The position numbers were made by a program, and so were the translations under genes. DNA of 64,000 bases, from positions 34,286,001-34,350,000 of the forward strand of contig OZ241833.1 in assembly GCA_965202585.1 (NCBI GenBank), written 5' to 3'. The notes under the pieces are model-generated. The model had not been told where the DNA came from. It saw only the letters and a program-made list of their open reading frames with translations, and searched no databases. Positions 763-51,900 of this stretch are shown one piece after another (position 1 is the stretch's first letter; the number at the start of each line of letters is the position of its first letter). The DNA comes from Thalia democratica (Eukaryota).

Positions 763-1977
763 GCAGTTAAATACTCTGTTAAACATGTATTTAGAAAAAA
801 ATTAAGTAGTTTTTAATATCTGCTTATTAAAATATGAGCATATAAACACTATTAGTTTGTTATTTTCATGCTTCAAAACTTGACTCAAAAAGCCAAGTTA
901 ACTGATTAACGTTGTTTTTTATTTTACAAGTAAGTGTCAACATAACTAACCGTTAAATGCAGCTTAGTTTACAAGCTTTTTACGCACGGAAGACATATTT
1001 CATTTCAGCACAACAAATTAAAAAAAAAGGTAACTTAATAAGTTGAGTGAAATAAAACTATTGTTTATTTTGCAACAGCTAAATTCAAAAAACTAACCAT
1101 CAGACACAGTTTAGTGCCAATTTTTTTCCTCACAAAAAACAACTTATTTTACTTTAGCACAACTGTCTGTTTGCTGTGCGGTAATTCTGGATATCCTAAA
1201 AAGTGTTTACACACGTGCACTCGTACACATGTGCACACAAATCACTTCAGCTGTTGAAGAATTATCTTACACTGTGTAAGTACGTTGGGGATTCAAATGG
1301 AAAAAATACAACAAAATGTATTTTGTTTGATTTTGCAGGTTTTTACAGATTTTTGAATTTTGAGTTTTCAAATGCTTTGACTCCGAGAATCGATTAGATT
1401 TGTTCGGATAACTCTATATATATACTTTTAAATTTAGTTGGAATAAAAAAATTCTTCAAACTGCTAGTTGTTTTACATACAAACGGTTTTACTAGTGTGT
1501 TCCTTTTTGGACAAGTTTAAGAAGTTGAACGTTGAAAAAGCTATTTATTGTTCATAACCATTGTTTGTTATATCTCAAAGTTTGTTTTACAAAATGCTAC
1601 TATACCATCATGGTGTAACCATAACTCAGATTATTTTAATTATAGAATAACTTACTTAGCCTTATAACAAACTAAAAAAGAACAAACCTAAAAGTGCTTT
1701 CTAATACTTATGACAATTATAATAATATTAACGATAAAGTTCTTAGTTATGTTCGTAATATTGTAATATTTTTATGTTACAGTTATATGTTAGTTAAGCT
1801 AAAAACAAAGCAAGAAATGATAAACGCAAATAAACTTTTTAAAAAGCCTTTACCGGTCGTAAATGCGCTATTCATCAAAGCACAGAACAAACATCAGACT
1901 TTTCAATCAGCAGCGCAACAAATCATTTAAGGCGACTTGTGAGAAATTTTCCCTTTGTTTGCTTCGTCAGGTGCGCT

Positions 1978-1992
1978 GGCGACTTCAAGTCT
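1978..1992 (+). promoter_or_regulatory. BMP/Smad response element (Id-1 promoter)
   Basis: GGCGAC-TTCAA-GTCT(G), an exact GRCGNC-N5-GTCT match. Confidence 0.8.
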
Positions 1993-2136
1993 GCTCAATG
2001 CACGTGCAACCTCGAGAAAATTGAAAAAAAAAAAAATTAAGAGATGAAATACGAGATAGCGGGTGGTAATTGGGTGGGATAATGTGAAGAAACAACTCTG
2101 AGAGCTTGGAAGGAAAAAAAAAGGCAGTTTGTCGCG

Positions 2137-2144
2137 CATATAAG
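2137..2144 (+). promoter_or_regulatory. TATA-like box of Id-1
   Basis: CATATAAG about 70 bp before the ATG, conserved in Id-2 (15047..15054, minus). Confidence 0.6.
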
Positions 2145-2213
2145 CGGAGCTGAGCTGCAAAAAATTATTACTTCAAAGTCTGCAGCGGCAAGCACACAAG
2201 CTAAAAACTCAAA

Positions 2214-2510
2214 ATGGTAAAAGCAAGCAAAATAGTATCTTCCAGCGAAAACAAAATCAGCAAAAACTCTTTGGCCATCAAAAAGAACGACGATTTGAAA
2301 GTGAAGGAGACGCTTTCGAAGCTGCAAAATATCCTGCCAAAATGCTGCGATCAAAACATCCTGCCAAAGTGTGGCGATGAAGAGGACCAGCTTGAAATAA
2401 TTCAGCAGGCCATCTACTACATCCGGGACTTGAGCGAGTTGCTGAATAAACCTCAGATCTCAGGAATGAAAAAGATCAGTAATCAGAACATCGTGTCTTC
2501 TCCAGTGTGA
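2214..2510 (+). CDS. Id: Id/emc-like HLH protein lacking a basic region (Id-1, 98 aa)
   Basis: ATG-started ORF. TLSKLQNILP...QLEIIQQAIYYIRDL matches helix 1 and helix 2 of Id/emc (YSKLKELVP...EILQHVIDYI.DL), with no basic region ahead of helix 1. TATA-like CATATAAG about 70 bp upstream. Confidence 0.88.
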   Translation: MVKASKIVSSSENKISKNSLAIKKNDDLKVKETLSKLQNILPKCCDQNILPKCGDEEDQLEIIQQAIYYIRDLSELLNKPQISGMKKISNQNIVSSPV

Positions 2511-2530
2511 AATGCAGAATAACTTACAAG

Positions 2531-2829
2531 GTAAATATTTTATTTTAGATATTAAAAAGTTTAAACTATATACTAAACTTCTTGCGAGGTAAATATTTAT
2601 TTGTTTCACACGTTTTGAGTTGATAGTCAAAAAAGATATCAGCTTTTGATATATTTGTTAAAATATACTTAAGGTTTAATCTGTTTTTAACGTAAAAGTT
2701 AACAAAATATAGTTTAATAAAACATAAAAGTTATTTAAAACTGTATCATTCAAATGATTAGATGTTAAATGAAACACTAAAAATACACTTAATTAAGAAA
2801 CAAGTCACTTATGATGTACAATTTTTCAG
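2531..2829 (+). other. Predicted 3'-UTR intron of Id-1
   Basis: AG|GTAAAT donor 20 nt after the stop and TTTTTCAG acceptor. Similarity to Id-2 stops just after the donor and resumes at the acceptor. AATAAA at about 2976. Confidence 0.75.
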
Positions 2830-5601: not shown

Positions 5602-5755
5602 CATTAGCTTAATTTATAATACATTTATGCACATGTTCGTACGAAGGCAGACTTGTAGGCGCCGTAACACCTGGGTTAAAGTGAAAAACAAATACTATGA
5701 AAGTAGTGAAAAGTATATGAGTGAGGAGCTGAAATGAGGAAAAATTGTTGCGCTG
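5602..5755. repeat. Triplicated BRE-containing element, copy A
   Basis: About 100 bp identical to copies B and C. Contains AGAC-TTGTA-GGCGCC (5649..5663) and CACCTG (5668..5673). Confidence 0.9.
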
Positions 5756-8700: not shown

Positions 8701-9434
8701 CCATAAAGTGTATTTTTGCATGAAACTTGTCAAAAGTGAGGGTGAACAGTGTAAAAGGAAAGGACACTTTTTACTGTATAAGAAAGTTCACAAATGACAT
8801 GTTTTATTGAGCTATTTTCACGGGTAGTGATAAATTGGACTACTTGTTGATTGAAATGATAAAGTAAGGAGTTTGAATACAAGTTTTAAACTTAAAGAAT
8901 TTACGATTAGTTTGATGCCAAAAGTTTAAAATTCTAAACACGATAACAAAATAAAAATTTGAATGGATATTTTGATAGCGAAATGTCGGGGTGTTTATAT
9001 AGTAATTCGTTTATAAAGTAATATATATATATATATATATAATTATCATGCGTTATTATTATTATCATGCGTTTTTAAAGCAATTACGGCTTAATTTATG
9101 TGTATTATGTACAAAAACTTTGTTTTGTTAACAAGCAACAAAAATTTGTACTTTATGATTTATGTTTATTATGACATTTAAACTTCATATGTATAGTTTT
9201 TACCGAATTATATAAACCTTTTAAAATATTTATAATTATTTCAAATGCTTACCTGCAAAGCATATCTTTTGTTTTTTCAGTTTAACAAAAAAATGTCCGA
9301 ATAACCAAAATTTTCAATCAAATAAAAAACCCTAAAACCCTTATTGTCAGTTTCATTAGCTTTGGTGGCTTTGCAAACTTTTCATCAAACTTAAGGTGGT
9401 CTCTTCTTTTAACAAAGGTCTAAGCTCGCACACA

Positions 9435-9585
9435 CATTAGCTTAATTTATAATACATTTATGCACATGTTCGTACGAAGGCAGACTTGTAGGCGCCGTAA
9501 CACCTGGGTTAAAGTGAAAAACAAATACTATGAAGGTAGTGAAAAATATTAGTGGGGAGCTGAAATGAGGAAATTTGTTGCGCTG
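9435..9585. repeat. Triplicated BRE-containing element, copy B
   Basis: Direct repeat of copy A. BRE at 9482..9496. Confidence 0.9.
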
Positions 9586-10659: not shown

Positions 10660-10750
10660 CTCGCGCAGGTGAGCTTCAGATCCGCGTATCTAATTGGCAG
10701 ACATCAGGGCGCCTCGGAACACCTGCGAGCTTGCAATTATGACGTCACAA
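10660..10750. promoter_or_regulatory. Putative enhancer: BRE, two E-boxes and a CRE
   Basis: CAGGTG at about 10666, AGAC-ATCAG-GGCGCC 10699..10713, CACCTG 10720..10725 and TGACGTCA 10740..10747, all inside a GC-rich island. Confidence 0.65.
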
Positions 10751-14408: not shown

Positions 14409-14660
14409 CTGAAAAATGAAAAATCATAAATGACATGTTTCATAACTAAATGCTTTTTTTGGTTTGTTGAAAAATACAAAGACTTCAACGATACAACTTT
14501 AACGTGTCTTTAATTTTAATTTTTTTTTTAAATGGTTTTAGTAACAATACAACAAATTTTAAGTTATAATTCAGTAAATGTATCAAAGGTTTAAATAATA
14601 TCATAAACTACTAATTGAACAATTTCAATACTGAAATAGCTGCAATAAAGTAATATTTAC
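14409..14660 (-). other. Predicted 3'-UTR intron of Id-2
   Basis: GAG|GTAAAT donor 19 nt after the stop and TTTTTCAG acceptor. The following exon (14408 to about 14262) aligns with Id-1 2830..2976. Confidence 0.75.
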
Positions 14661-14679
14661 CTCATAGTTATTTTGCATT

Positions 14680-14976
14680 TCACACTGGAGACGACACGAT
14701 GTTCTGATTACTGATCTTCTTCATTCCTGAAATCTGAGGTTTATTCAGCAACTCGCTCAAGTCCCGGATGTAGTAGATGGCCTGCTGAATTATTTCAAGC
14801 TGGTCCCCTTCATCGCCACACTTTGGCAGGATGTTTTGATCGCAGCATTTTGGCAGGATATTTTGCAGCTTCGAAAGCGTCTCCTTCACTTTCAAATCGT
14901 CGTTCTTTTTGATGGCCAAAGAGTTTTTGCTGATTTTGTTTTCGCTGGTTGATACTGCTTTGCTTGCTTTCACCAT
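14680..14976 (-). CDS. Id: Id/emc-like HLH protein (Id-2, 98 aa), inverted paralogue of Id-1
   Basis: 9 nucleotide differences from Id-1 over 297 nt by manual comparison. Same promoter and TATA-like box. Confidence 0.88.
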   Translation of the reverse strand: MVKASKAVSTSENKISKNSLAIKKNDDLKVKETLSKLQNILPKCCDQNILPKCGDEGDQLEIIQQAIYYIRDLSELLNKPQISGMKKISNQNIVSSPV

Positions 14977-15193
14977 TTTGAGTTTTTAGCTTGTGTGCTT
15001 GCTGCTACAGACTTTGAAGTAATAATTTTTTCTTGGCCCTGCTCCGCTTATATGCGCGACAAACCGCCTTTTTTACTTCCAAGCTCTCAGAGTTGTTTCT
15101 TTACATTATCCCACCCAATTACCACCCGCTATCTCGTATTTCATCTTTTTTAATTTTTTTTTCAATTTTCTCGAGGTTGCACGTGCATCGAGC

Positions 15194-15346
15194 AGACTTG
15201 AAGTCGCCAGCGCACCTGATTTGCAAGCAAACAATGAAGATTTTCAATGAAGATTTCTCCAGACTGGCTGGCGCCCCGCACCTGCAGCGAAAAGCGAAGA
15301 TTTTTTTTTGGTGAGAAAAATTTTCGCAGCCAGACTTGAAGTCGCC
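15194..15346 (-). promoter_or_regulatory. Triple BRE array (Id-2 promoter)
   Basis: Exact elements at 15194..15208, 15261..15275 and 15332..15346. GTGAGAA at 15311..15317. Confidence 0.8.
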
Positions 15347-24413: not shown

Positions 24414-24633
24414 TGGCGACTTCAAGTCTGGCTGCGAAAATTTTTCTCACCAAAAAAAATCTTCGCTTTTCGCTGCAGGTGCGGGGCGCCAGCCAGTCTG
24501 GAGAAACCTTCATTGAAAATCTTCATTGTTTGTTTGCAAATCAGGTGCGCTGGCGACTTCAAGTCTGCACTTGCACGTGCAACCTCGAGAAAATTGAAAA
24601 AGAGATGAAGTAAGAGATAGCGGGTGGTAATTG
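24414..24633 (+). promoter_or_regulatory. Orphan copy of the Id-2 promoter with three BREs and no downstream ORF
   Basis: About 220 bp closely matching the reverse complement of 15113..15348. BREs at 24415..24429, 24485..24499 and 24552..24566. Confidence 0.85.
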
Positions 24634-27600
24634 TGAGCGGGGGGTGGGGGGGGGGAGAAATGTCGCCGAGGAAAGTTGCGAACGTTGAAAGCGGAATCGC
24701 TTAAATGAGTTGAAGTTTACGGTAAATAAAGTTTATTCGTATGCTGTGAATAAAGTAATAAAACAAAAAGCTGAAGCCGATATTGTTTGAGTAAGTGTCA
24801 GGTGTTTACTGCAAGTGCGCTCCAATGATAAGTTTGTAAATTGAAGAGCTAGTTGTTTGTGCCTATTCGGTAAGGTGGTATGATTGGTTAGGACAAAAGT
24901 TTTTGATAAGTAACATAAAATTTGCACCTCCCTAATTCATTACTGTTTGGTAAAAAATATTAGAAATAAGTGAAAAAAAAATTCTGCTTACAATAAAAAT
25001 AAAAACAAAAAACGACATTAGTTAAAATGTTTTTTATGTAAAACAAATACGTTTAGAAACTAAAGTACTAGTGTCTAAACAAATATAGAAACTATTTTCT
25101 TCGAAAATAAAATACTAAAATACAAGTTATGCCTTCTGACAATTAAACTTTTATTGAGACTTTTTAGAAATATTGCAGTTATAATCAACTTAAAGCTTCA
25201 ACGTACTCTACAATAGCTAAGGTGGTGAATACTTAAAATATATTTTAATGTAAATTTTTTTTAGAAGTACAAGTTTAAAACATACATCATTAAATTACAT
25301 AGAAAACAGTACATCACAGCCTGTTACTGTTTAATAAAAAAAATACTTTACGTTTTTTAAACATAATTAAATGAAACTTTGAATTAAAAAAAAGCTCATT
25401 ATAATCCGTTTTTATATAGTGTCTAAAAACATGTGGAGTAAGTAGGTAAACTAGATCTATATATCGTATCACGAAAAACGAATGAAAAGGCATGCAAAAC
25501 TAGTTTAAATTAAGAATTTATGTTTTTAAAACGTTTAAAAGCAAAGTTTTATGTTTGAATTTCAGCTTACAGTAGACCATGTGTCTTTTATACAAGTACT
25601 TTAAGTTAAAAAAAAAAACAGTACTTAACGTTTTATATTTATATAAAAAAGTTTTGATAACAGTTTAGTTTAAAAAAAACTTTAGTAAAAAAAATATTTT
25701 TTTAAAGTGTAGTAGGTAAACAGAAATTTTCAAAACTTCTACATGGTTATTTAAAAGCGGTTTTAAAACAAAAAAAAGTTGTAGTAAATTTGTACAGTCT
25801 GAACGAGTTTTGCGTTTTGTATTTAAATAAAAATAATACATAATGTTTTACAAAGTTAAAAAAACTGCTTAGCAATAAACCTTAAAATTTTAGCTAAATA
25901 AACGTGACAAAAAAGTATTTAATAGAATAATTAAGGAGACAGACAAATATTTTATAGTAATTTAGTAATGACAATTTCAAATAGTTTATCAACAAATAAA
26001 CAAAACTAACCATATAAAGCTCGCTATTTGAGTGCAACTCGAAAATATATAACCTGATACAAAAAAAAATCTGATTTTTACATTCTGATAAATTTTAATA
26101 ACGGCAAAGGCAAAAGGGCACGAACCATCTGCGACCACGGCTATCCGATGACATACTTTTCAAAAGCGCACTTAATTGAGCGTTTTACAACTCAAAAAAA
26201 AAACCAACAGATCGCTTTATTATCACAGCCGAAAAAAAGCCGCTCCGGCGTGGGAGTTTGCGCGAAAAGATACTTTTTCATGTCCACGCGTATGCACATC
26301 ACAAAAGCGGCCGCTTTTCGAAAGACCTGAGCCCTCAAAGCCTCGAAATTCGCTCCCATTGTTTGCCCACGTGCAGCAAGGGAAACCTCAGGTGCTCCGG
26401 CTAAACTCCTGACCCGAGCCAGCTGCGCGAATTATTGTTATTGTTCGAATGCGCTGTTTGCTCTTTGAATCGCGCATCCTCCGTCTTTTGTTTCGACGCC
26501 GAATAAACTGTTTGTTTGCTTTTCTGATAACGGGCTTACGCACGCCGGCAAAAGGCGCTTCGTTGCTTTGAATTTGTATACGCTGTTTTGAAAGTTTTGT
26601 TTTGAAAAAATGCTACAAAGAAACTATATCCGACAGTTTTTAACTGACAGTGTTTAGTTTTTAAATTTATATTTTGTTTTGGAAGTTTTCATTATGATAA
26701 AAGCTAGTGCTACGACTACGTTTGTATTAAAATAAAATGATAAAAAATGAGCAGATAGAGAAGTAATATATACTAAATAAAAGTCATTTATTAGAAAGTA
26801 AGTAAGTAAAATAGGCATTTTATGAAACTGGTAATCTTGATAAATATGTCAAAGTTTTTGAAATCAATAAAAAAGTTTCTCACTTAGTTTTAAAACTTGT
26901 CTTAAATTAAAACAACTCTAAAGTATTTTTGATAGTTTAAGAATATATTTTGAAGCAGATTAAAAAATTTACATCTTTTAATCTACCGGCTGGTTACACT
27001 AACTTTTTTTATTCAAAATTTCAGATTGTTGAACTAGGTTTATTTTACTTTTAACTTTTTTCGATAAGATTAGTTACAAATACTTAGAGATGTTTGTATT
27101 CATGACTTATGTACACGTAGTTTAATGTAATGAATTATTAAACTTTCAATCTAATAAAAAATAAGTTTTGCAAATTAAGACCTTAGAAAAACTACGTGGA
27201 ACTCTGTTATTAGCTTGATACAGAGAAACGTGCATCAGTCCAACAAATTGAACTGTTGTCATAATATTCCAACGAACTTGTTTCGTTCGAATTTCTGTTA
27301 AACATGTAGTTTTAGCAATTAGTACTATGTGAACTTTGGTAAACTAAATCCTAATGTTTTGTTAAGTTTGTGTTTATTTTGTGAAAAGTAGCATGTTAAA
27401 AGCTAATTTGTTTTATCTTAATAAATTTTATACTATCTTAACTTTATATTAAAATACTTAAATGTCTATAATTAACCAGTCAAAGAAAGAAAATATTTTA
27501 AGTAGTACTGCATTTAATTTACCCTAGAAAACCTTTTGTGGAAGTTTGTTAAATATTGTTATATATAACAATAACATGAACAGTTTTCTAAAAATTATTT

Positions 27601-31442: not shown

Positions 31443-31742
31443 TCACCTCCGTCCGACCGTCCGCCCCTCGTCGTCGATGTTGACGAAGCAGTGTGACGTC
31501 ACAGTCCTCTTGCTCTCGTCACTGTTTCTTATGACGTCGTGCAGCAGCTTTATGTAGGCGGTGACGTCGCGCAAAACGGTGACGCAATCGCGCTCCGAAG
31601 CGACGTCACGACTTCTGGCGGGGACCAGCTCCCTGAGGTCGTCGAGCAAGTCCATCACCGCTCTGACGTCATTTTGTGAGTCTTTCGTGACGTCACGGTT
31701 GGTTTCGGACAAAATGCTGACGTCACTAGTTTGGATGCTCAT
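31443..31742 (-). CDS. Divergent basic-less HLH protein, Id/emc-like (99 aa from the first ATG)
   Basis: VMDLLDDLRELVP...CVTVLRDVTAYIKLLH fits the HLH helix 1/helix 2 pattern and there is no basic region. GC-rich ORF in AT-rich DNA. The track ORF starts at a TTG (31775); the first ATG is at 31742. Confidence 0.75.
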   Translation of the reverse strand: MSIQTSDVSILSETNRDVTKDSQNDVRAVMDLLDDLRELVPARSRDVASERDCVTVLRDVTAYIKLLHDVIRNSDESKRTVTSHCFVNIDDEGRTVGRR

Positions 31743-31767
31743 TGAATTTTTTGTTAAATTAATTAAC

Positions 31768-31831
31768 CTGAACAATCGGTAAATTTTTGTTTAAAAGTTA
31801 GTTACTTGTTGTTGTTTATATTTGTATTTAC
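31768..31831 (-). other. Predicted 64-bp 5'-UTR intron of the divergent HLH gene
   Basis: On the minus strand: AG|GTAAAT donor, TAACTAAC branch-like motif, and TTGTTCAG acceptor 25 nt before the ATG. Confidence 0.55.
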
Positions 31832-32890: not shown

Positions 32891-32918
32891 CAGGTGCGAG
32901 CCAGGCGCCTCGGTGTCT
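32891..32918 (+). promoter_or_regulatory. E-box plus BRE 1.2 kb upstream of the divergent HLH gene
   Basis: CAGGTG-CGAGCCA-GGCGCC-TCGGT-GTCTG. Confidence 0.7.
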
Positions 32919-35900
32919 GGCAAACAAGAAAATTTCTTCCTCTCTCGTTTTTCTCGACAAACTTTTTCATTCTCTCGTTTTTCGTTGGTGAATTTACGGC
33001 GTGAAAATTCGTCCAAGCACGTGCTAGCAGTCTCTCGCTCGTTTTTGTCGTTGGTGGGCGAGAAAGTATGATTGAGTAAACATTTTTCGCATGTGGTCTT
33101 AATAAATAAAAAAGAATTTGCTTTGGTACTTTAAGTTCTTAAAAAAAACAGTTTTTGCTGAATGGTTTTATCATATAAGTAGAAAACTACGGGGTTTCTT
33201 TGGATTTTTAAATCTCAAAAGTCAAGTATTTGGTTTGAATTTTCATATAAGTTTTTCGTTGTTAAAAATTCTAGAAAAAATTAAATTTTTAATAGCAAGC
33301 TTAAAATACTTTACTAACAAAAGTGTGTTTTTAAAGTACTGAAACTTACTAAAAAACCCAGAAAGATAAATATTTTTAGTTTTTTAGTTTAAGACTGTTA
33401 AAAACTGTAAACTCACTGCCAATGTCAAGTTTAATACTTTATAATTAGCGGTAACTTTAAATAAGAAAAGTATAAACTTATGGACAATTGTAATTTAAAA
33501 ACGTAATAATGTTCCTTATCTGGAAAAAGCAATTATTTCTGCGCGCAGTACAAAGTGGCTCAAGTACACGGAAAATAACATACTTTTCGCTAATTATCTC
33601 CAAATCAGATGTTAATAAATTTTTAATTGGCGAATTATAATGTGATTTCGGCTAAACTTGTTTTGTATGCTGTCACCGACTTGTTAAGAAAAAAAAATAA
33701 AAATAATGCACAACTAAAAATGTGATTATGTAAAAGATATTACGTTAACAGTTATAATACTATTTTCGGCAAATAGTTAACTTTTAATATTAAAATAAAT
33801 TAAGATTTTAAGTATAACTTTGTTTTAGTTTGTAAAGAATACTAAAGGTAAAAAAGAATATATTACTAAATGTTTAAAATTTGAACCGTTTAAAAGTCAT
33901 CTTTAAATCTTTAAAAAGTTTTAATGAAAACTTTGTTGGTTCATTTTGAAAAAAAAAAAAGATTAAGGTTAATTCTAAAAGTATTCGTTATATTTATAAA
34001 TATTCAAAATCAGTATTTCATTATAAAGTAAAACTAGTTTAAGGCCTAATACAACACAATTTTTGTAAACTGGTTGTAAATCATCTTAAATACCACAAAA
34101 AATTCAATAAAAATGTTTTAAAGTATTTTAAAGTCTTTTAAGTATGTTTATTGGTTGAACCACTTTAAAATATTGTATAAATATTAAAGCTTAAATTTTG
34201 AAATAAGTTAAAGTTTACTTTAAATTCATTGAACTGAACGACTATAAAAGCTGTTAGACGAAGTTTTCAAACATTTTTGAACAAAATAGGTCTATTTTAA
34301 TAAATAAAATAATGAATGTAAGAAAAACAGAGTAAAAAACTATTTTAATTAAATAAACAGTATAAAAATAGACATATATTTCATTTGAGTACGTTTTCTT
34401 GTTACTGAAAGTTTTTATAGTAACATACTTGTTTATAACTCAAAAATATATTTTAAAAATTTATTTTCCTAGAGGTTTTAAACTATTTTAAAAGTTTTCA
34501 AAAAAATATGTTTAATAATTTGAACTACGATAAAAATTTAAACTTTTAGTTACTTAAATGTTTTTATTATATACTTATGATTAAACAACTAATCTCTAAT
34601 CTATGAAAAATTCTAAAATTAGCTAAAAAAATATTGCTCATTTAAACATAAATACAGTTTTTCAATCTGCATGTGCTTACTTTGTTTTAAAATCTTTTAT
34701 TCCTTTCAGCAAAGCAAATTTTTACTTTTAAAACATTTAAAGTTACAGCTAACACTATCATAGTTAAAGTCTTTGAAGCACAAAAAAAAAACTTTAAAAA
34801 TAGGTTCTTAAACCACTGTAAAATTAATCAAGTTGTTTTAAATAAATAACAAACCAACAAAGCAGGACTATTTGAACTCTAGTTCTAAACATCTTTTACA
34901 ACTTTTCTACTTTTAAACTACAGTCAATACTAATGTAATTAAATTTAACCTCATAAGACCTACCAGCAAAAAAATATAAATGGTAACCTTACTTTTTGAA
35001 GTATATGGGATGGTAGTCCTAATGTTAGAAAAATATAGTATCTTATAGTATCTACTGTCCATATTTGAATGATATATAAAAAAAAACTTAAACAAACTAT
35101 ACAACAAGTTGTTTTCTAGTTAATTGTTTCAAAACTTTAAAATACATCTAGCTAATTAAACAAAACGTACATATATCCCAATATTCTAGGTATATCAACA
35201 AAACTCATTGTTAAAGTCTCTTTATAACTGCAAATTTTTAAACAAATATCTGCCGAAAAATAGTTAAAAACATAGTTTTATACTACTTTCAACCGTCTAG
35301 TTACAACCATCTTTATCTAAATTAAATGATCTTAAAACAAGGAAAAACTTAAACAGAATAACAACTTAACTTCTAATTTAACATTCTGAAGTTAAGATAA
35401 AATGTTTAAGCTAGTTTAAAGTTTAGCAGCCATACCCAATAGATAATACTGAACTTATCAACAAAAATCCCCAAATAATTGCAAACTTTATCTGATGAAT
35501 CTCTGTCAACACATGGTTACAGCCTCACATGACTATGAAGTCAACAAAAAATCACAAATACCAATGTTAAAAATGCTAAGTTGGTCATTTAGCAATAAAA
35601 AAACACATTTTGTTCCTTTATGAAAACCCTATGCGACTGCACTTATTCCTGACGAATCTCTGTCAACACACGTTCGCAACGCGCACACGCATGAATGACA
35701 GTTGCTCGCTCGACGCGGCGCGCTCGACGGCGTTATGACGTAACAGTAGGCAACCAGTTGCCAGATAAACTTGAACATCAGCTGTCACTCCACCTTAATC
35801 ATCGACCGATATTTCTTGTTTTCGCTACATTCTGTCGATTTTAATTGATTTAATTTTTTTCAATTGTTATCTATATTTAACTGTAGTGCTGTAAGAAAAA

Positions 35901-42776: not shown

Positions 42777-44696
42777 AGATAAAAACGGGTTTAACTTATT
42801 TTCACATATAGTCAAAGTGTGTTAAATTATCATCAGTATGATGAAAACAATTTTCTAAATTTTATTCAAATACACCTTTAGAAATGTAAGATGTTTAAAT
42901 TTAATAAAAATATATGTAATACAGCGATTAACTTCAATTTCGCAATCTTTTAATCTTATTTACATCGTTTGAAACAGTTCTTTTTGAAACTAAATTACTT
43001 TATCTAGAACAACATGCGTTTAAAGGTGCATTATGACAGGAACATTCATAAATGTTTGTTCTTAAAAAAATTAACTAGTTTTTAGAACAAGCAAACATTG
43101 CACGCTATGTTTAATTTTTAGCTTATCTTGAATGAATTTTTAAATTTATTTTAACTTTGTATTCTCTTGAGCAGCTTTTAGAAAGTCTAATATTATTTCT
43201 CTAATGTACGACTATTGACAGTAACACTTTGAAAAAATATTTTTAAATTGCTTTTGACCATTTGATTTTAATGGTCCTGCTATAGTGCTTTTACAAAAAA
43301 ACAGAAACTGTTTTCATTTTACTTAATGAAAATTAATAAAACTTGAACAAGACTCAATTAAACATTTTAGTCTGTTCTGCTGTCTGAATAAACTGTTTTT
43401 ATACCGTTAAATCATAACAAAGAACTCATTTTATTATAAAATCAATGGTTCCTTTAGTTAAAGTTTTACAACTCAAAAACAAGTTTGTTCTTTGAAAGAA
43501 GCTACTGACTGATATACTCTAAAAACAAGTTTGTAACAAGACTTTGACTGTAGTTGTAAAATTTTTGTCAAGTCTAATTATAATATTTTATGCAAATTGA
43601 ACTTTAAAAATGTTAATAACAAGAATTGTATTGTAGTGTTAAAATTATAATTTTTGATATTAAACATTTTTCTGTCAGTGTTAGTTTAAAAATAAATGAT
43701 TGTTGTTCATTGAAACGTTTCAGATGCTGTAAAACAAGTAATGTACTATTATAAAGTCCTATTATAAATGAATAAAAGTTCAAATTTTATGAAAACAAAA
43801 AGTGTAAAATCAAATTGAATTGTGGTTTCTACAAAATGTTTCAAACTGAAGATTTTTTTGAAGTTTTTGAAAACTTAGGAAAAATTGATAAATAATTCTT
43901 TTCATTACTGCTTAATTTCAATTTAAAAATGTACAAACAAAGTGTTGTTTTTAATTGTTTTACATCTTTATCATTAGAAAGTCAGATAACTTAATTTTAG
44001 GTTTAAACTTTTGTAATTTATAGAAACTTTTACCGGCAGTTGTAACATTTTTTTTTAAGTAAAACAATATTAGTGATAAAATCATTAATAACAAGTAAAC
44101 AAACACAATGTTCTTATTTTATATCCTTTTTCATAATCTTTTTATTGTTAAGAGTAAATATTTGAACTTTGTATTTTTTTTTGTTTATTTGTACGCTTTT
44201 TTTATCATAAAAGTTAACTTAGATAAAGCTTTTTTAGTTTCACTGTTTCGAATCTAAACTGTTATAATTTTTTTTTATTTTAAACATTTATGTGTTTTAA
44301 TTAACTTAAATGTCATATAAGCAGGGTAAACCAGTTCAGCGAGTTCTAATAAGTAAACTTCTTTTAATAGTCTACACTAAAAACAATAAAAAAATTCACT
44401 TAGCCCAGTAATATCAAAAAATTGAAGATATTAAAATTATAAAAAATAGAAACAAACTTTTATAACTCAGACTTAAACTAATGATAATTTTTTGGTGCAA
44501 AATATAACATTATTTTTATCGGAAAAGTTTATAAAATGTAAAACAATCTACATTTATCATACTTAGTAAAAGTTAACTAGTCTAATAGTTTTACAGTCCG
44601 TATTTTTGATACTTAATTCAACGTAAATTTTATACATTTTTTACAAAAAGCAACTTTTACTGCGCAAAAACTTGCTCCTACTCTGAGCTTTTCCCT

Positions 44697-44824
44697 CCCC
44701 ACTCATATTTTTCACTACCTTCATAGTATTTGTTTTTCACTTTAACCCAGGTGTTACGGCGCCTACAAGTCTGCCTTCGTACGAACATGTGCATAAATGT
44801 ATTATAAATTAAGCTAATGTGTGT
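44697..44824. repeat. Triplicated BRE-containing element, copy C (inverted)
   Basis: Reverse complement of copies A and B. BRE at 44758..44772. Confidence 0.9.
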
Positions 44825-47800
44825 TTTGAATGAAATATTAAGTTGCTTGTTTACAAAGTCAATATTGCCTTGAATTGCTTTGAAAGTCGTTTTGAAAGTT
44901 GAACGAAAACATTATTGTAATCAAATACTGAGTTATATAAATATATGTTTTTTTGAATGTTTTGAAATGCCAAAGCTATTTGATTTGTTAATCGAGTGAA
45001 ACACTACTTGTTTAATAAACAAGCTTTAAATAAAATCCTGTAGAAGTTAGTTTACAATAGATAATTAAACTAATTTTAAAAAAGCGTTGTAAAAGTTTTA
45101 TATACAAAATATACGAAAGACAGCAGTATTATTTACAAGTTCCAAATCTGTTTTATTAAAAAAAAACTAAATGTTTATAACATAACAAGTTTGACTTAAA
45201 AATAATTTCAAGTTGCATTATAACCTACAAATAAAAACTTTTTAAATACAACTTAGATATAAGAAAAACTTTTTTATGATAAAAAATATTTTGTGGCATA
45301 GATAAGTTTTTTATTTTTCAAAAATAATTATGTAAAATGGCTTGAGTTTAAAAACTCATAGAAACTGATAGAAACTAGTTAGTAAGTAAAATTAAAAAAA
45401 AAAATTTATTCCATCAAAATGACTTAGCTTGTAAATAAATACGTCAAATTTTTTATTAATTAATCTCCACTTAACCACTAATACAGTGATCATGAACTTT
45501 TAAAATAATTCTTAAACTAAACTCATGTTTATTGTCAAGCCATCAACTTTCAAAATGTTTAAATTTAAGTTCTGTTATAAACTTTTTTGTAAGATTTACT
45601 ACTTAACTTAAGGTTAGTTTTTGTACGTTTTTTTGAAAACAACACATCAGTCACATGATATAAATTTACCATTTGACGGGAGTGACTTGGGATAGTTTAT
45701 TTTCAACTTTAGCAAAAAATCAGATAAACTTGTTTAACTTCAGTTACTTCTATTTTTAACGGCTTACGACTCCCTTGGTTAACATGTGACTTAGAACTAA
45801 ACTTTTCTGATAAGTGTTATCTAATCTATTGTTTTTGTACATGCTGACCCGGAGACTTCTTGACGCTTGTTTTAATCTGTTTTATCAAACAAGAGAAATA
45901 CTCGTTTAAAAACAGTTTTATGTTTTAATATTTTCTCGTCTTTTTGGTACAATTGGTCTCTTAAACTAGAGTAAAAAACTTAAAACTATTAATTCTTTTT
46001 TTATAGTAGTACAAAGTTGTTGCATAAAATATGTAATTAATAATTAGTTAGTTTTAAGCTATTAACAAAATGTATTTCAATCTGCTTTGATAAACACATT
46101 ATAAAAAAAAAGTTTTTTGTTTTATGTGTTTAATATTTATATGTAGTTTTTTGATAAAAATTTGAGATTACAATTGTGCAGTTATTCTATTTAACATACA
46201 TGTTAGAGTAGCAAAATGTTGTTGTATATATAAGTTTGACTTAAACAACAATAAGTAAAAACTATAGCGCTTAATATTAGCTATAAAGATTTCAAATTAA
46301 AGTTGTTTTAAGGTTCTAAGATAAAAACTACAGACTTTTAAAAACGCTTTTACAAGTGACTTGTTTTGTACAAACAAACAAAAAACAAAGTTTACATGCT
46401 AAGAGCTATATAAAAGCAAATCTATGATAAGTATTTAAAACATGAATATAGTGCAATAGAAATAGGGTACGGCCGTACGGGTCATTTAAAGTAAAAATAT
46501 ATTTTAGGTAGTATTGTATTAGATCTATTACTTTGTTTGGATAAACTAGTGCAAATTTTATTCAAGTTTTGTTGTTTATGAAAAAAAAACTATTTGATTT
46601 GCTGCAGTTAAATTCGTGCAAACTTTAAAACAAAAGTTTTGTGTAAATTCACAATAGACATTCGTAACATACTTTTTGTTTGATTAATTTTGTTAACCCA
46701 AAAATAAAAAGCTTAATTAAACCGTTGCGATTTCAAAATTAGTTTTTATTAAAGTTAAAAAATTGAATGTAAAAAAAAAAAAATAAACTAGTTAAAAAAA
46801 TTAAAATCAATTACTCAGTAGCATAAAAAAGAGTAAGCTAAAGGCATAGGTGCAAAACATTTTTAAGTATTTTGCTTTTTTAAATTTCATATAAACATTT
46901 TAGCTTCTCATGAACTTAGAACAAGAAAAACTTCTACTTTCAATAGTAGGACTGGTTTTTTTAAAGCACTTAACATTTTTATAAACTTTTTTAGAAAACT
47001 TTACTTCCAAAAACTTTGGAATTTATCTATCAGTTCAAGTGTTTTAATGTGCTGGTACTTAAAATTCAAAGTTCAAACCTGTCATTTGCTACTTAATGAA
47101 ATGTCAAATTAAAAACTGCGTTTTTGTGTCGATAAAATTGCTTAAAAACAGATTTTTTTTGGTTTCCTTAAATTTTTTTTGCATTGAGTTATTTTTAATA
47201 TCCATTGGCTTGTGCTCGTAATTTAAAAGATGCCTAATATTTTAAAGTAAAGTTTGATAACTATCAAAACAAGACTAACTTAAAAATTATATTATCAAAA
47301 GGTGATGTTAAAACTTATTGTCAAAAACGGATACAATGTTAAACATTTTTTTATCATTTTATAACTTTTCATAAATCCTTTTGTACTGAAACTTTTGTAA
47401 AGAAACAAAACTACAGTTTATTATTAATCTAATTAGTAGTCAAAATTAGATATAAGATTTAATTGAAAAATTTGAAGTTATTATTTAGCTACAAACGTTA
47501 GCCGTCCTTCGGTTTCGTTCAAAATCAATTTTTTTTTACGTTTACAAATAAAACAGAACAAGTTTGTTTGTATTTATTGAAAAAATTACACTTAAAAAGA
47601 CTTTCAACTTTAAAAATACAAGTTTGAGATATAACAATGATGTTTACTGGTAAGTATATCAAAAATCATACAAATAAGAAAAATGAAATGTTTTTTTCTC
47701 CTATTTTTGATGTTTACAGCTCTCTCTTCTGACTTGTCAGCTACAGCAAGGAATTAGAATAACTCAGCAATAATCTCCACTTCGTTCTACTTCATTTTCT

Positions 47801-48155
47801 GCGAATTTTAAGTTATATTTAATAGATATAAATAGGGATGCACTTCAATTCCGTATTTAAGTTGTAGTTATCTTAAAACTAGTAAGTTATTTTTTAAGCT
47901 TTGTTTAAATTAAAAAAACACATGTTCGTACATTTTAACTTAAGTTTGAAGAAAAACTAATAAGAAAATAAAAACATAATAAACATGTAGAAAAATTATT
48001 ACTTTTATACTAAACACTATGACTTCAACTCATGTTGATAGTTAAATCTATACGCTTTAGTTTTTAAGAGTTTAGGTTTAAAATAAAGCAAGTAGAAAAC
48101 AAAAACATGTCAAATGTATCAAAAAATACTAACCTTCATGATTTACCCTGAATAC

Positions 48156-48389
48156 TCAGACGGGGGCCAGAAGATCCCTCAAATCCTGTATGTAGTAGAT
48201 GGCCTGCTGAATTATTTCAAGCTGGTCCTCTTCATTGCAGCATTTTGGCAGGATGTTTTGCAGCTTCGAAAGCGTCTCCTTCACTTTCAAATCGTCGTTC
48301 TTTTTGATGGCCAACGAGTTTTTGCTGACTCCGTTCTGGGTGGCCACGTTTTCCTTGTTAGCTGAGCTTTTGCACTGCGGCTTCACCAT
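48156..48389 (-). CDS. Id: Id/emc-like HLH protein (Id-3, 77 aa)
   Basis: HLH core nearly identical to Id-1/2 but with a single QNILPKCC unit and a different N-terminus. Ends PV-stop followed by a GTAAAT donor 9 nt later (48146), mirroring Id-1/2. Confidence 0.85.
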   Translation of the reverse strand: MVKPQCKSSANKENVATQNGVSKNSLAIKKNDDLKVKETLSKLQNILPKCCNEEDQLEIIQQAIYYIQDLRDLLAPV

Positions 48390-48591
48390 TTTTTACTTTA
48401 AAGTTTTCTTTGTTGACACTCGTAGAAAGAAGTCAAACTTTTAAAGCAACTTAAATTTCTCTCCATACTTAAAGAGACGCTGAACTTCTTTTGCACGTTC
48501 TCTCGCGCTCGCTCGCTCCAATTTCTCTCCCACCTCAAATACGAGAGAGTGAGCGAAATTCAATTTTGTCGAGGTTGCACGTGCATCGAGC

Positions 48592-48988
48592 AGACTTGAA
48601 GTCGCCAGCGCACCTGATTTGCGAGCAAACAATGAAGATTTTCAATGAAGATTTCTCCAGACTGGCTGGCGCCCCGCACCTGCAGCGAAAAGCGAAGATT
48701 TTTTTTTAAAATATTTTTTTATTCAATTATTTTTTCTCGGTGTGAGAACGAAAGAGGAGGCCAGACTTGCCGTCGCCGGCCGATGGAAAACAATGGAAAG
48801 TAATTAAATAAGAAAGTTTTTGATTTCACGGCAATTTAATACAAATTTTGTGTGTGCTTTGTATTCTCAGTGCAACCTCTTTTTTTTGAGTAAAGTTTGT
48901 GTTTGCTGTTTAAATTAACTTTCGATTTTTTTAATGTTTGGTTTGATAAATATTTGATAAAATTTGAAACGCCAGACTGCGCGTCGCC
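48592..48988 (-). promoter_or_regulatory. Four-BRE array (Id-3 promoter)
   Basis: Exact elements at 48592..48606, 48659..48673, 48763..48777 and 48974..48988. GTGAGAA at 48742..48748. Confidence 0.8.
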
Positions 48989-51900
48989 AAGTTTAAAACA
49001 GTAAAACTGATAAAAATATATTTTTTATCAGGTATCAGCTTCATAAAGTTTTGTAACTTTTTAACCTTATCTTTTGTTCTGTACTTTTGTTTCTTTGTTG
49101 GATTTGAGTTTAATTTTTTTTTTGTAACAACAAAGTTGTTTTGAGAAATTAAAACTGTGAGACTGAAAATAATGACAAATGATAAAATTTATAAACGTTA
49201 AATACTTAAAAAAAGTTTTTCTTATAAAGTTTGTGATACTGTATTGAAACGTGTATCAAATAAAGTTTAGTTTAGATTTTCTGTATACTAAACAATTAAA
49301 GTATTAATTGAACAAAAGTCTCAAGAAACTAAAGATGCTAGACTTATAGTTTCCTTACAGTAGAAACAAAAACATTAAAATAAACTACTTATAATATTTT
49401 CCTTATTTAATTAACTTTTTAATTGTAAAAAAATAATAACAAATCTGACTAAATTGTGTGTTTAAATTTATTTTTTTGTTTTTAAAGTTATAGTTTGCTT
49501 TAACCGCATCAATTATAAAAAATATTTTAACACGTAATCAAAAAGCTTGCTGATTTTTCATTTCTTGCAGTATTCCGTTATCAAATAAAATCAAATAAAG
49601 ATTTATTCTTTACATTTTAATGTGGCAAAACCATATTGTTACACTTTTAAAACAAAGTGGTAACTAAAAAAACTTCTGTTTTTATTTTGATTCATTGAAA
49701 ATAAATTCAAAATTTCAGTTTAGTGGCAAAGTTAAGATTGAATAAAGTTTTTTTTAAAATTTAAACAGTTGAGAAATATAAATTTTGATAATCTTAAGCA
49801 ATTTGTGACTTTATTTAACCTTAAAAGTATTTTTATGACTAATAAACTCTTTGTACCTCCTAGAAATCAGTTATAACTATAAAGTGTATCCATTAAAAAA
49901 ACCTTATAGTAATTTCAAACAGTTATCAAAACTAATATTTCTAAAAGTTTTATTCAAGATCTACGTTTGCTAAATTTCGTGAAAGGTCATTGGGTATGTC
50001 AACTCATTAAAAATACAAAAAAAGTTCCTAGACTTACAGTTGCCAAATATAAAATACAGCTATTTAAACTGCTCATTTAACACTTTCATAGCGATTAGTT
50101 TTCAACAATAAAAATTTATTTAGATAATAAAGTTCAAACGGATATTTTTACTATTTTAAATCAAAACGAAACACTACGCTTTTAGTTTTTTATAGCATCC
50201 GCTAATTAATCAAAAACCTTTTAATGCTTTTTGTGAATGTTTTCTTTTTAAATTAAAGGTTTTAATGTTATTTTTACAGCTAATTTGATGTATTTTCACA
50301 TTCATAAAACTTTGCACAGTATAGAGAAAAAAGAACAAATGTTATGTACTTTCTAACTGTTACTGTTTTATGGTTGTTTTAGAAACTCTAAAAAATTAAA
50401 AGTCTTATATTTTTGTTGTTTTCTTATAAGTTTGGAACTTTTAAATAAGAACGGATTTTTAATTTACAGCTATATTTATTAATAAAAACCCAAAGTAAAA
50501 ATATTTAAAACAGTTGTTCTAGAAAGTATTGACAACGTTATAAAAATCATACTTTATTTCTGTTATAAAAAAATGTAAATAAAACCTCAAAAGCAAAGTT
50601 TAAAATATTAATTTAGAAACATAACCATTTGTTGAAGGCCTTAAAACTTTATGATTAGATAATGTTTTTTAGCTGATAACAATGTTTCTTAATGTAGTGT
50701 TTTAGTACAGTTGTATGTTTTTATAGAAACATAAACTTAAAAAAAAACTCTGAAAACAAAAAGAGATTTCTTTTTAGCATTATACTGTGCTTTAGTTATG
50801 TTTTATAGCACAGATATTTTTTAAACTGCTTAGAACTCACCAAAGTTAGAGCTAAGACAAATAGATAACATTAAATTTACCGATTATAAAAATACTGATT
50901 GTTCTTGTAATATGGTCAGAGATCATTGAATAAAGTGCTAAACACGCTTTTTGTGACGTTTTGGAACACACAGTTTTAATGTTTGTTTTTAAAACGAACT
51001 GCAAGCTTTACATATGTTATATATAAGAGTTATTTAATTAATTGTTTATTGAATTAAAAAAAAAGCGCTCAAATATTTGGTCCAAAGACCTGGTGTACGA
51101 AAAGACCTTTCGGTTATCGAGTCATACACCAGGATACAGTTTAAAGTCATGTCCAGGACAACATAAGAGATACATTTATAAAACAGAATCAAAAGATGTA
51201 CAACTAACTACAAATTTATAAACTTTAGTAAAGTATGTCGTGTAACTTTTTAAAATAAGTTTTCGCAATCTCACCGAATGATAAGTTTCGTTTGGGAACG
51301 AATTTTAAAACTGCTTAAATTTTTGCTTAAAACAGTTTTCGGTAGTTCTGCAGCTGCAATTCGTAATCACATTAAGCAACTTGACAAATCGCTACCTTCA
51401 CAAAAAAATTGCGATTAGCTAAAAGTACGGTGAGAATCTAAAACCGTTAAAAATTTCACGGTCTCAGTGTGTTAGAGTTAAGCGAATACAAATACAGCCG
51501 TTTGTAACAAATCAATTTTGTTTAGTTTTATATTTTACAGTAGTTTGTACTGTTTTTATGTATTAAAGTACATACGGGTTATACAAATGAAAAAAAAATT
51601 AAAATAGAGTCTTGAAATAGTAGTATTTATAAAGTGTACGTTCATGGCTAGAAAATAAAACTCACTACATAAACATGTGCTTGTTAATGTTTTGTTAAAT
51701 AATTTAAATACAACTAATTGAAAAAGGCCTGAAAATTTCTAACAGCTGTGTACGACTTAGCTACAAATAAAAAGCAAGGTACACACAATTAGCTTTTTTT
51801 TACGCACAATACGAATGTTACCTTGAATAAAACAAATCAAAGTATTCTACGGGACTGCACTAGTTTAGTTTAAGTTTTCTAAAAATAATTAATTTTTCAA

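What the first reader, a model, noticed from the sequence alone, without database searches (positions are those of the whole stretch)
48190..48708. Id-3 is a mosaic: two near-identical patches separated by unrelated sequence
Seen: the HLH patch (48190..48328) differs from Id-1 at 3 of ~140 nt plus the 27-bp indel, and the BRE patch (48561..48708) differs from Id-2 at 2 of ~148 nt. The intervening core promoter, 5' UTR and N-terminus, and the C-terminus, do not align. Synonymous sites and BRE spacers are also identical. Inference: tract-limited gene conversion over 33-46 kb that homogenises the dimerisation domain and signalling enhancer while leaving paralogue-specific parts free.
Basis: partly seen in the sequence, partly recalled or inferred. 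Interest (0 to 1): 0.7.

Follow-up and report, generated by a model that had tools for sequence, protein, structure and literature searches.

The report
Id-3 patches copied between paralogues
A small Id-like regulator gene shares two almost identical 140-150-base patches (its dimerisation domain and an upstream BMP-type enhancer) with sister genes 33-46 kb away, and comparison with relatives shows that copy-correction between the genes explains at least the coding patch: a clean but ordinary case of gene conversion.

Summary
Id-3 (48156-48389, minus strand, 77 aa) differs from Id-1 at 3 of 139 bases in the HLH patch, plus a 27-base tandem duplication in Id-1 and Id-2. It differs from Id-2 at 2 of 149 bases in the upstream patch. 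Sequence just outside all four borders is at chance identity.

Id-3-type genes, with the same N-terminus, C-terminus and 3' flank, occur in diverged marine-metagenome relatives, so the duplication is old. Yet synonymous divergence in the patch is 0.12 between Id-3 and Id-1/2 in this genome, against 0.72 and 0.32 between Id-3 and its orthologues. Those two values match the neutral rate of the Id-3-specific parts. The patch tree groups sequences by lineage, not by gene type (AU p 0.006-0.026; 0.13 without the 27-base unit).

For the enhancer patch the picture is mixed. The proximal 99 bases are about as conserved between species as between paralogues, so selection alone suffices there. Only the distal 50 bases show excess paralogue identity, and that rests on one orthologue.

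The "free" termini are in fact constrained (dN 0). This is a new member of a known kind and of modest interest. The same scan noted conversion-like islands elsewhere in this genome.

The parts
48156..48389 (-). Id-3 coding sequence, 77 aa, in a single coding exon
   Evidence: ORF list and translation. Sub-threshold Pfam HLH match. Orthologue P0007/L001 at 95% protein identity.
48190..48328 (-). HLH patch: near-identical to Id-1 (3/139) and Id-2 (4/139), and the inferred conversion tract
   Evidence: dS is 0.12 to the paralogues and 0.72 / 0.32 to orthologues L001 / L002.
48329..48558 (-). Id-3-specific middle: N-terminal 21 codons, 5' UTR and core promoter. It does not align with Id-1/2 but is conserved in Id-3-type relatives.
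   Evidence: No BLAST match to Id-1/2. L002 is 91% identical over 48521-48175 and the L001 N-terminus has dN 0.
48559..48707 (-). BRE patch: 2/149 different from Id-2 upstream (15161-15309). It holds two E-box + Smad-type bipartite sites and a CACGTG.
48591..48616 (-). Proximal composite site: CAGGTG followed by GGCGAC-N5-GTCTG. Invariant in all relatives except the most distant.
48658..48682 (-). Distal composite site: CAGGTG followed by GGCGCC-N5-GTCTG
48762..48777 (-). Third bipartite site, outside the near-identical patch. It is a diverged counterpart of the Id-2 site at 15331-15346, so the promoters are anciently homologous.
47799..48133 (-). Intron in the Id-3 3' UTR (GT..AG on the minus strand)
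   Evidence: A metatranscriptome joint 47798/34 skipping 335 bases, seen in two contigs (table 5).
2214..2510 (+). Id-1 coding sequence, 98 aa. Its HLH counterpart is 2257-2422. It lies in inverted orientation, 46 kb from Id-3.
2325..2378 (+). 27-base tandem duplication (QNILPKCCD / QNILPKCGD), also present in Id-2. The two units differ at 4 of 27 bases.
   Evidence: It is absent from most relatives.
14680..14976 (-). Id-2 coding sequence, 98 aa, in the same orientation as Id-3 and 33 kb away
15161..15309 (-). Id-2 upstream copy of the BRE patch
24452..24598 (+). Copy of the BRE patch in an orphan promoter with no HLH exon behind it (6 mismatches and 1 gap against Id-3)
1955..2025 (+). Id-1 upstream copy of the proximal half of the patch only

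Best explanation
Id-3 is an old paralogue of Id-1/Id-2 in a three-gene cluster. Most of its sequence has diverged beyond alignment. Its HLH-coding segment was overwritten recently by non-reciprocal copying from, or to, Id-1/Id-2, that is, by interlocus gene conversion during repair of a DNA break. The tract is about 140 bases long and ends where homology ends. The upstream enhancer patch has probably been exchanged in the same way among Id-2, Id-3 and the orphan promoter. There, however, strong purifying selection on a roughly 100-base Smad/E-box enhancer explains much of the identity by itself. Shown here: the patches, their borders, the age of the duplication, and the excess of paralogue over orthologue similarity at synonymous sites. 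Inferred: the repair mechanism, the direction of transfer, and the idea that selection keeps islands similar enough for conversion to keep acting on them.
For: Borders and identity. The duplication is old: Id-3-type N-terminus, C-terminus and 3' flank are present in L001 (80% identical over 443 bases) and in the still more distant L016. Synonymous divergence in the 46-codon patch is 0.125 for Id-3 vs Id-1. It is 0.72 for Id-3 vs L001, where the flanking Id-3-specific codons give 0.75 and 0.89, and 0.32 for Id-3 vs L002, where the N-terminus gives 0.41. Total differences are 4 against 17 (binomial p 0.0036). Synonymous sites in the patch are therefore not frozen: Id-2 vs L006/L007 gives dS 0.27-0.31. 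The patch tree groups Id-3 with Id-1/Id-2/L005, L001 with L007/L006, and L016 with L008. The AU test rejects an Id-3-type clade at p 0.026, 0.012 and 0.006. Between Id-3 orthologues the patch has more amino-acid changes (dN 0.046) than the termini (dN 0), as expected if one orthologue's patch was overwritten. The fourth, divergent HLH gene at 31443-31775 shares no DNA patch, which shows that HLH constraint alone does not preserve DNA identity. In the distal 50 bases of the BRE patch the three window copies are identical, while L007 has about 11 differences plus indels.
Against: All orthologues are short, low-coverage metagenome contigs from unnamed organisms. Orthology is inferred from flanks only. 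The AU test loses significance (p 0.13) when the 27-base unit columns are removed, leaving 111 sites. The proximal 99 bases of the BRE patch are about as conserved between species as between paralogues, so they give no evidence for conversion. No Id-3-type orthologue covering the BRE patch was found. Patch GC (0.43-0.48) equals that of the Id-3-specific middle (0.43), so there is no GC-biased-conversion signature. The donor and the direction are undetermined: at 48623 Id-3 keeps the base seen in L005 and L007, while Id-2 and the orphan carry the other base.
Confidence: 0.72

Rival explanations
1. Purifying selection alone. The two patches are ancient and are simply kept invariant because the HLH dimer interface and the Smad/E-box enhancer tolerate no change.
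For: The core CAGGTG + GGCGAC-N5-GTCTG and the CACGTG are invariant in nearly all relatives. The 47-base spacer is identical in L007, whose locus is only 79% identical overall. In the proximal 99 bases paralogues differ by 2 and orthologues by 3-5. HLH residues are mostly invariant across 11 proteins.
Against: Synonymous sites of the HLH patch change freely between species (dS 0.27-0.72) but not between the paralogues of this genome (0.12). The distal 50 bases of the enhancer patch differ in L007. The fourth HLH gene shares no DNA similarity.
Confidence: 0.15
2. Id-3 is a young chimeric gene, assembled recently from pieces of Id-2 (enhancer, HLH exon segment) inserted into unrelated sequence by duplication or template switching. 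It is not an old paralogue that was corrected.
For: The patch borders are sharp, lie next to A/T runs and are flanked by unalignable sequence. An orphan copy of the enhancer patch without a gene exists at 24452-24598.
Against: The Id-3-specific N-terminus, C-terminus, 3' UTR and intron are found at 80% and 73% identity in diverged relatives (L001, L016), with the proximal Smad site about 200 bases upstream of the ATG in L016 as in the window. A diverged third Smad site and the shared ending ...PV-stop show ancient homology of the whole unit.
Confidence: 0.05
3. Assembly or haplotype artefact: the patches were pasted into the Id-3 locus by mis-assembly of a very heterozygous genome.
For: The individual is highly heterozygous: alternative unitigs are 5-10% different in the flanks. 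Short unitigs break at the patch borders, so none bridges a whole patch.
Against: L001, L002, a metatranscriptome contig (48274-48411) and a contig of another organism (48178-48422) each join Id-3-specific sequence to the HLH patch. The Id-3-specific base at 48236 and the absence of the 27-base unit distinguish the locus from Id-1/2. Depth of the middle segment fits two haplotypes.
Confidence: 0.03

Closest known systems
Homeobox-limited gene conversion between the linked Dlx pair of the annelid Capitella teleta (PMC3199776)
   Same: Two linked paralogues of a developmental transcription regulator carry a tract of about 150 bases of near nucleotide identity, confined to the conserved domain, in an otherwise diverged pair that includes an inverted arrangement.
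   Different: Here three genes and an orphan promoter take part over 33-46 kb, and a second island lies in the upstream enhancer. Orthologue comparison, rather than GENECONV alone, supports the inference.
Long-lasting segmental concerted evolution of mammalian gene pairs BMP8A/B, DDX19A/B and TUBG1/2 (PMC2720389)
   Same: The duplication predates speciation. [quoted passage not shown] The authors likewise speculate that homo- or hetero-binding domains are kept alike.
   Different: Those cases rest on named genomes and on intron identity. Here the tracts are much shorter and one of them is non-coding and regulatory.
BMP response elements of vertebrate Id genes: Smad1 site GGCGCC/GACGCC, a 5-nt spacer and the Smad4 site GTCTG (PMC3439458)
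   Same: The same bipartite motif with the same 5-base spacer lies upstream of each Id-like gene. There are 17 matches in the window against 0 expected.
   Different: Function is untested here. Twelve of the 17 sites carry a CAGGTG E-box 3-7 bases upstream, a grammar I did not find described in the papers read.

Membership tests
Id / Emc class of HLH proteins (HLH without a basic region) | Helix-loop-helix dimerisation domain | tested here: inconclusive
   Pfam HLH matches all 11 family members but below the curated cut-off (best E 0.004, 16.9 bits against 20.7). AlphaFold predicts helix 29-50, a loop and helix 55-73 with pLDDT around 90. The Foldseek PDB search gave only generic helical hairpins.
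Id / Emc class of HLH proteins (HLH without a basic region) | No DNA-contacting basic region before helix 1 | tested here: met
   The Pfam HLH match starts at profile position 16 of 53, so the basic part is unmatched. The preceding residues (NSLAIKKNDDLKV) lack the E-R-x-R pattern of bHLH proteins (read from the sequence).
Id / Emc class of HLH proteins (HLH without a basic region) | Specific similarity to known Id proteins | tested here: inconclusive
   A family profile against PDB gives ID-1, ID-2 and ID-3 chains at E 0.07-0.33 among unrelated hits. The single sequence gives nothing. Atlas feature hits to ID-4 and ID-1 clusters score 0.88, below the 0.9 guide value.
Interlocus gene conversion / concerted evolution | Paralogues within a genome are more similar than orthologues between species, with the duplication older than the speciation | tested here: met
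   In the HLH patch there are 4 differences against 17 (L001) and 11 (L002), and dS is 0.12 against 0.72 and 0.32. Id-3-type genes occur in L001 and L016. For the enhancer patch the feature is met only in the distal 50 bases.
Interlocus gene conversion / concerted evolution | Discrete tract with sharp borders inside diverged sequence | tested here: met
   Identity is 97-99% inside the patches and 7-17 of 40 bases immediately outside all four borders.
Interlocus gene conversion / concerted evolution | Tree of the tract is incongruent with the tree or type of the flanks | tested here: met
   The AU test rejects an Id-3-type clade on the patch at p 0.026, 0.012 and 0.006. It is not significant (0.13) with the 27-base unit removed.
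Interlocus gene conversion / concerted evolution | Conversion events seen segregating in populations or pedigrees | not testable with these tools
   There are leads only. A contig of organism C joins the Id-3 N-terminus to a patch with 27 extra bases. Contigs L002/L003 and L004 are reciprocal mixes of Id-3-type and Id-1-type ends, but they may be assembly chimeras.
Smad1/5-Smad4 BMP response element | GRCGNC, 5-base spacer, GTCTG | tested here: met
   17 matches in 64 kb against 0 in 100 shuffles. Four lie upstream of Id-3. The motif definition is from PMC3439458.
Smad1/5-Smad4 BMP response element | Smad binding and BMP-dependent activation | not testable with these tools
   No binding or reporter data are available.

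The most novel reading that the evidence does not exclude
The Id cluster may be a small conversion network in which at least three families of islands are kept interchangeable: the HLH exon segment, the 5' Smad/E-box enhancer, and a second enhancer-like island 3-5 kb downstream of each gene. Whole modules (N-terminus, C-terminus, the 27-base loop unit) would be reshuffled between paralogues in wild populations, giving segregating chimeric Id genes such as Id-3-head/Id-1-tail and the reverse.
Probability: 0.2. Interest if true: 0.55.

Novelty: new member of a known kind. Interest (0 to 1): 0.33.

Why it matters
The case shows, with orthologue controls, that a dimerisation domain of a developmental regulator can be kept identical among old paralogues by copy-correction rather than by constraint alone. 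It also gives a worked example of how to separate the two causes for a linked enhancer, where constraint explains the proximal part. Anyone annotating or dating Id genes in this lineage should note that the HLH segment cannot be used to infer orthology or the age of the duplication. Segment-limited concerted evolution is well documented, so the general significance is modest.

Tried and rejected
1. I searched the protein database with the spurious ORF across the enhancer patch (48491-48709) to fish out orthologous enhancers. No candidate was found.

2. An exact-motif scan and a family-profile scan of JGI metagenome contigs found nothing.

3. An exact look-up of the Id-3 protein found it not on record.

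4. A single-sequence PDB search and a Foldseek PDB search were uninformative for family assignment.

5. I looked for mirror-image concerted evolution in the most distant lineage (L016 Id-3-type against L008 Id-1-type). The tree joins them at 98/97 support, but they differ at 32 of 138 bases, about as much as each differs from the rest. Long-branch attraction or different source species cannot be excluded, so I do not rely on this.

6. There is no GC-biased-conversion signature. Patch GC equals that of the Id-3-specific middle, and GC3 (counted by eye) is high in both.

7. The donor or direction could not be inferred. The diagnostic sites conflict or are shared with relatives.

8. Logan unitigs are too short to bridge the patches, so read-level proof of the assembly across a whole patch was not obtained.

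Full report
**What is there.** The window is AT-rich animal DNA (27% GC). It comes from an 802-Mb assembly.

It holds three small single-coding-exon genes for HLH proteins without a basic region:
- Id-1: 2214-2510, plus strand, 98 aa.
- Id-2: 14680-14976, minus strand, 98 aa.
- Id-3: 48156-48389, minus strand, 77 aa.

A fourth, very divergent HLH ORF lies at 31443-31775. A profile search of the whole assembly finds no further copies.

Assignment to the Id class is plausible but sub-threshold by sequence:
- Pfam HLH matches all family members below its cut-off, and only from profile position 16 on, so the basic region is not matched.
- A family profile hits ID-1/2/3 chains in PDB at E 0.07-0.33.
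- The predicted structure is helix-loop-helix, but the fold search is generic.

**The observation.** It is correct to the base.
- 48190-48328 differs from Id-1 at 3 of 139 positions and from Id-2 at 4.
- There is also a 27-base gap. That gap is in fact a tandem duplication in Id-1/Id-2 whose two units differ at 4 of 27 bases.
- 48559-48707 differs from Id-2 upstream at 2 of 149 positions.
- Copies of the enhancer patch also sit in an orphan promoter at 24452-24598, and half of it sits upstream of Id-1.
- Identity in the 40 bases outside every border is at chance level, and nothing else aligns between the loci.
- Neither patch occurs elsewhere in the genome, so they are not a dispersed repeat.

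**Is the mosaic real?** Yes.
- Metagenome contigs L001 and L002 join Id-3-specific sequence to the HLH patch. So do a metatranscriptome contig (48274-48411) and a contig from a third organism (48178-48422).
- Zero-difference unitigs of the best-matching run reach both outer borders.
- The same call shows two haplotypes 5-10% apart in the flanks.
- It also shows a spliced 335-base intron in the Id-3 3' UTR (47799-48133), so an Id-3-type gene is expressed in marine plankton samples.

**Conversion or constraint: the coding patch.** Protein searches returned only marine-metagenome relatives, and their DNA was fetched.
- Judged by N-terminus, C-terminus and 3' flank, L001 (80% identical over 443 bases) and L016 (73% over the coding sequence) are Id-3-type.
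- L005, L006, L007 and L008 are Id-1/2-type.
- The Id-3 / Id-1 split therefore predates these lineages.

In the 46-codon patch:

| Comparison | Differences | dS in patch | dS in Id-3-specific codons |
|---|---|---|---|
| Id-3 vs Id-1 | 4 | 0.125 | not alignable |
| Id-3 vs L001 | 17 | 0.72 | 0.75 (N-terminus), 0.89 (C-terminus) |
| Id-3 vs L002 | 11 | 0.32 | 0.41 (N-terminus) |

- Synonymous sites of the patch thus evolve at the neutral rate between orthologues but are nearly identical between paralogues of one genome.
- This is the defining signature of concerted evolution (binomial p 0.0036 for 4 against 17 differences).
- The maximum-likelihood tree of the patch groups sequences by lineage, not by gene type.
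- The AU test rejects an Id-3-type clade at p 0.026 for three rows and at 0.012 and 0.006 for four rows.
- The test is not significant (0.13) when the 27-base unit columns are dropped.
- Between Id-3 orthologues the patch has more replacements (dN 0.046) than the termini (dN 0). This fits overwriting of the patch in one lineage. It also shows that the paralogue-specific termini are constrained, not free.

**Conversion or constraint: the enhancer patch.** The patch holds two composite sites, each CAGGTG followed by GGCGCC or GGCGAC, 5 bases and GTCTG, and a CACGTG box. The bipartite motif is the Smad1/Smad4 BMP response element described for vertebrate Id genes (PMC3439458).
- In the proximal 99 bases, Id-2 and Id-3 differ by 2. 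L005 and L007 differ from them by 3-5, plus a 3-base indel in L007. The spacer is conserved even in L007, whose locus is 79% identical overall.
- In the distal 50 bases the three window copies are identical, but L007 has about 11 differences and indels. That points to homogenisation but rests on one orthologue.
- No Id-3-type orthologue covering the enhancer could be found.

**Mechanism.** The best reading is ectopic gene conversion. A break in one copy is repaired from a paralogue 33-46 kb away, and the tract is limited to the island where homology survives. Id-1 lies in inverted orientation to Id-3, and Id-2 in direct orientation. Selection on the HLH and on the enhancer core probably keeps these islands similar enough to remain conversion substrates. 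The direction of transfer is unresolved: at 48623 Id-3 keeps the base shared with L005 and L007, while Id-2 and the orphan carry the other base. There is no GC-bias signature.

**Comparison with what is known.** The closest precedents are:
- the 150-base homeobox-limited tract between the linked Dlx genes of Capitella (PMC3199776);
- the segment-limited concerted evolution of mammalian pairs (PMC2720389).

This case adds a regulatory island and an Id-like family, but it is the same kind of process. Other notes of this scan report conversion-like islands elsewhere in this genome; I did not test them.

**Verdict.** This is a new member of a known kind, of modest interest.

Noticed in passing
window 1-64000 (for example 1978, 5648, 9481, 10698, 15193, 15260, 15331, 24415, 24485, 24552, 30110, 32904, 44758, 48591, 48658, 48762, 48973): There are 17 matches to the Smad-type bipartite motif GRCGNC-N5-GTCTG against 0 expected. 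Twelve of them have a CAGGTG E-box 3-7 bases upstream, including non-homogenised instances at 10698-10725 and 32891-32919. This suggests a fixed E-box + BRE grammar across the cluster.
   Followed up: partly
window 5602-5755, 9430-9585, 44695-44824: A second family of near-identical islands (95-99%, sharp borders) carries the same E-box + BRE composite. One copy lies 3-5 kb downstream of each Id gene. Two more copies lie on the unplaced contig C1635, probably an alternative haplotype.
   Followed up: partly
window 2325-2378 and 14812-14865: The 27-base tandem duplication in Id-1/Id-2 joins a CCD-type unit and a CGD-type unit that differ at 4 of 27 bases. Both unit types occur singly in relatives, so the duplication may itself come from unequal exchange between diverged copies. 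A contig of another organism seems to carry 27 extra bases in an Id-3-type gene.
   Followed up: partly
L002:1-502, L003:1-501, L004:1-855: Some metagenome contigs are reciprocal mixes. L002/L003 have the Id-3-type 5' UTR and N-terminus with an Id-1/2-type C-terminus and 3' flank. L004 is the reverse. They are either real recombinant alleles or low-coverage assembly chimeras formed at the shared HLH patch.
   Followed up: partly
L005:1-831 against window 1930-2790 and 14420-15285: L005 follows Id-1 in the intron (54-57 of 60 against 15-32 of 60 for Id-2). It nevertheless carries the distal enhancer module that the window's Id-1 lacks and Id-2 has, so the Id-1/Id-2 pair is also mosaic between lineages.
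   Followed up: partly
window 47859-48177 and 49063-49299: Unitigs of the best-matching run come in pairs, one identical to the window and one 5-10% different. This indicates very high heterozygosity of the sequenced animal.
   Followed up: no
window 31443-31775 (minus strand): A divergent HLH ORF rich in GACGTC has its own E-box + BRE about 1.1 kb upstream. It shares no DNA patch with Id-1/2/3 and was used here only as an internal control.
   Followed up: no
window 24414-24760: The orphan promoter copy is followed by a G-rich stretch and a possible splice donor, but no HLH exon was found downstream by tblastn.
   Followed up: no
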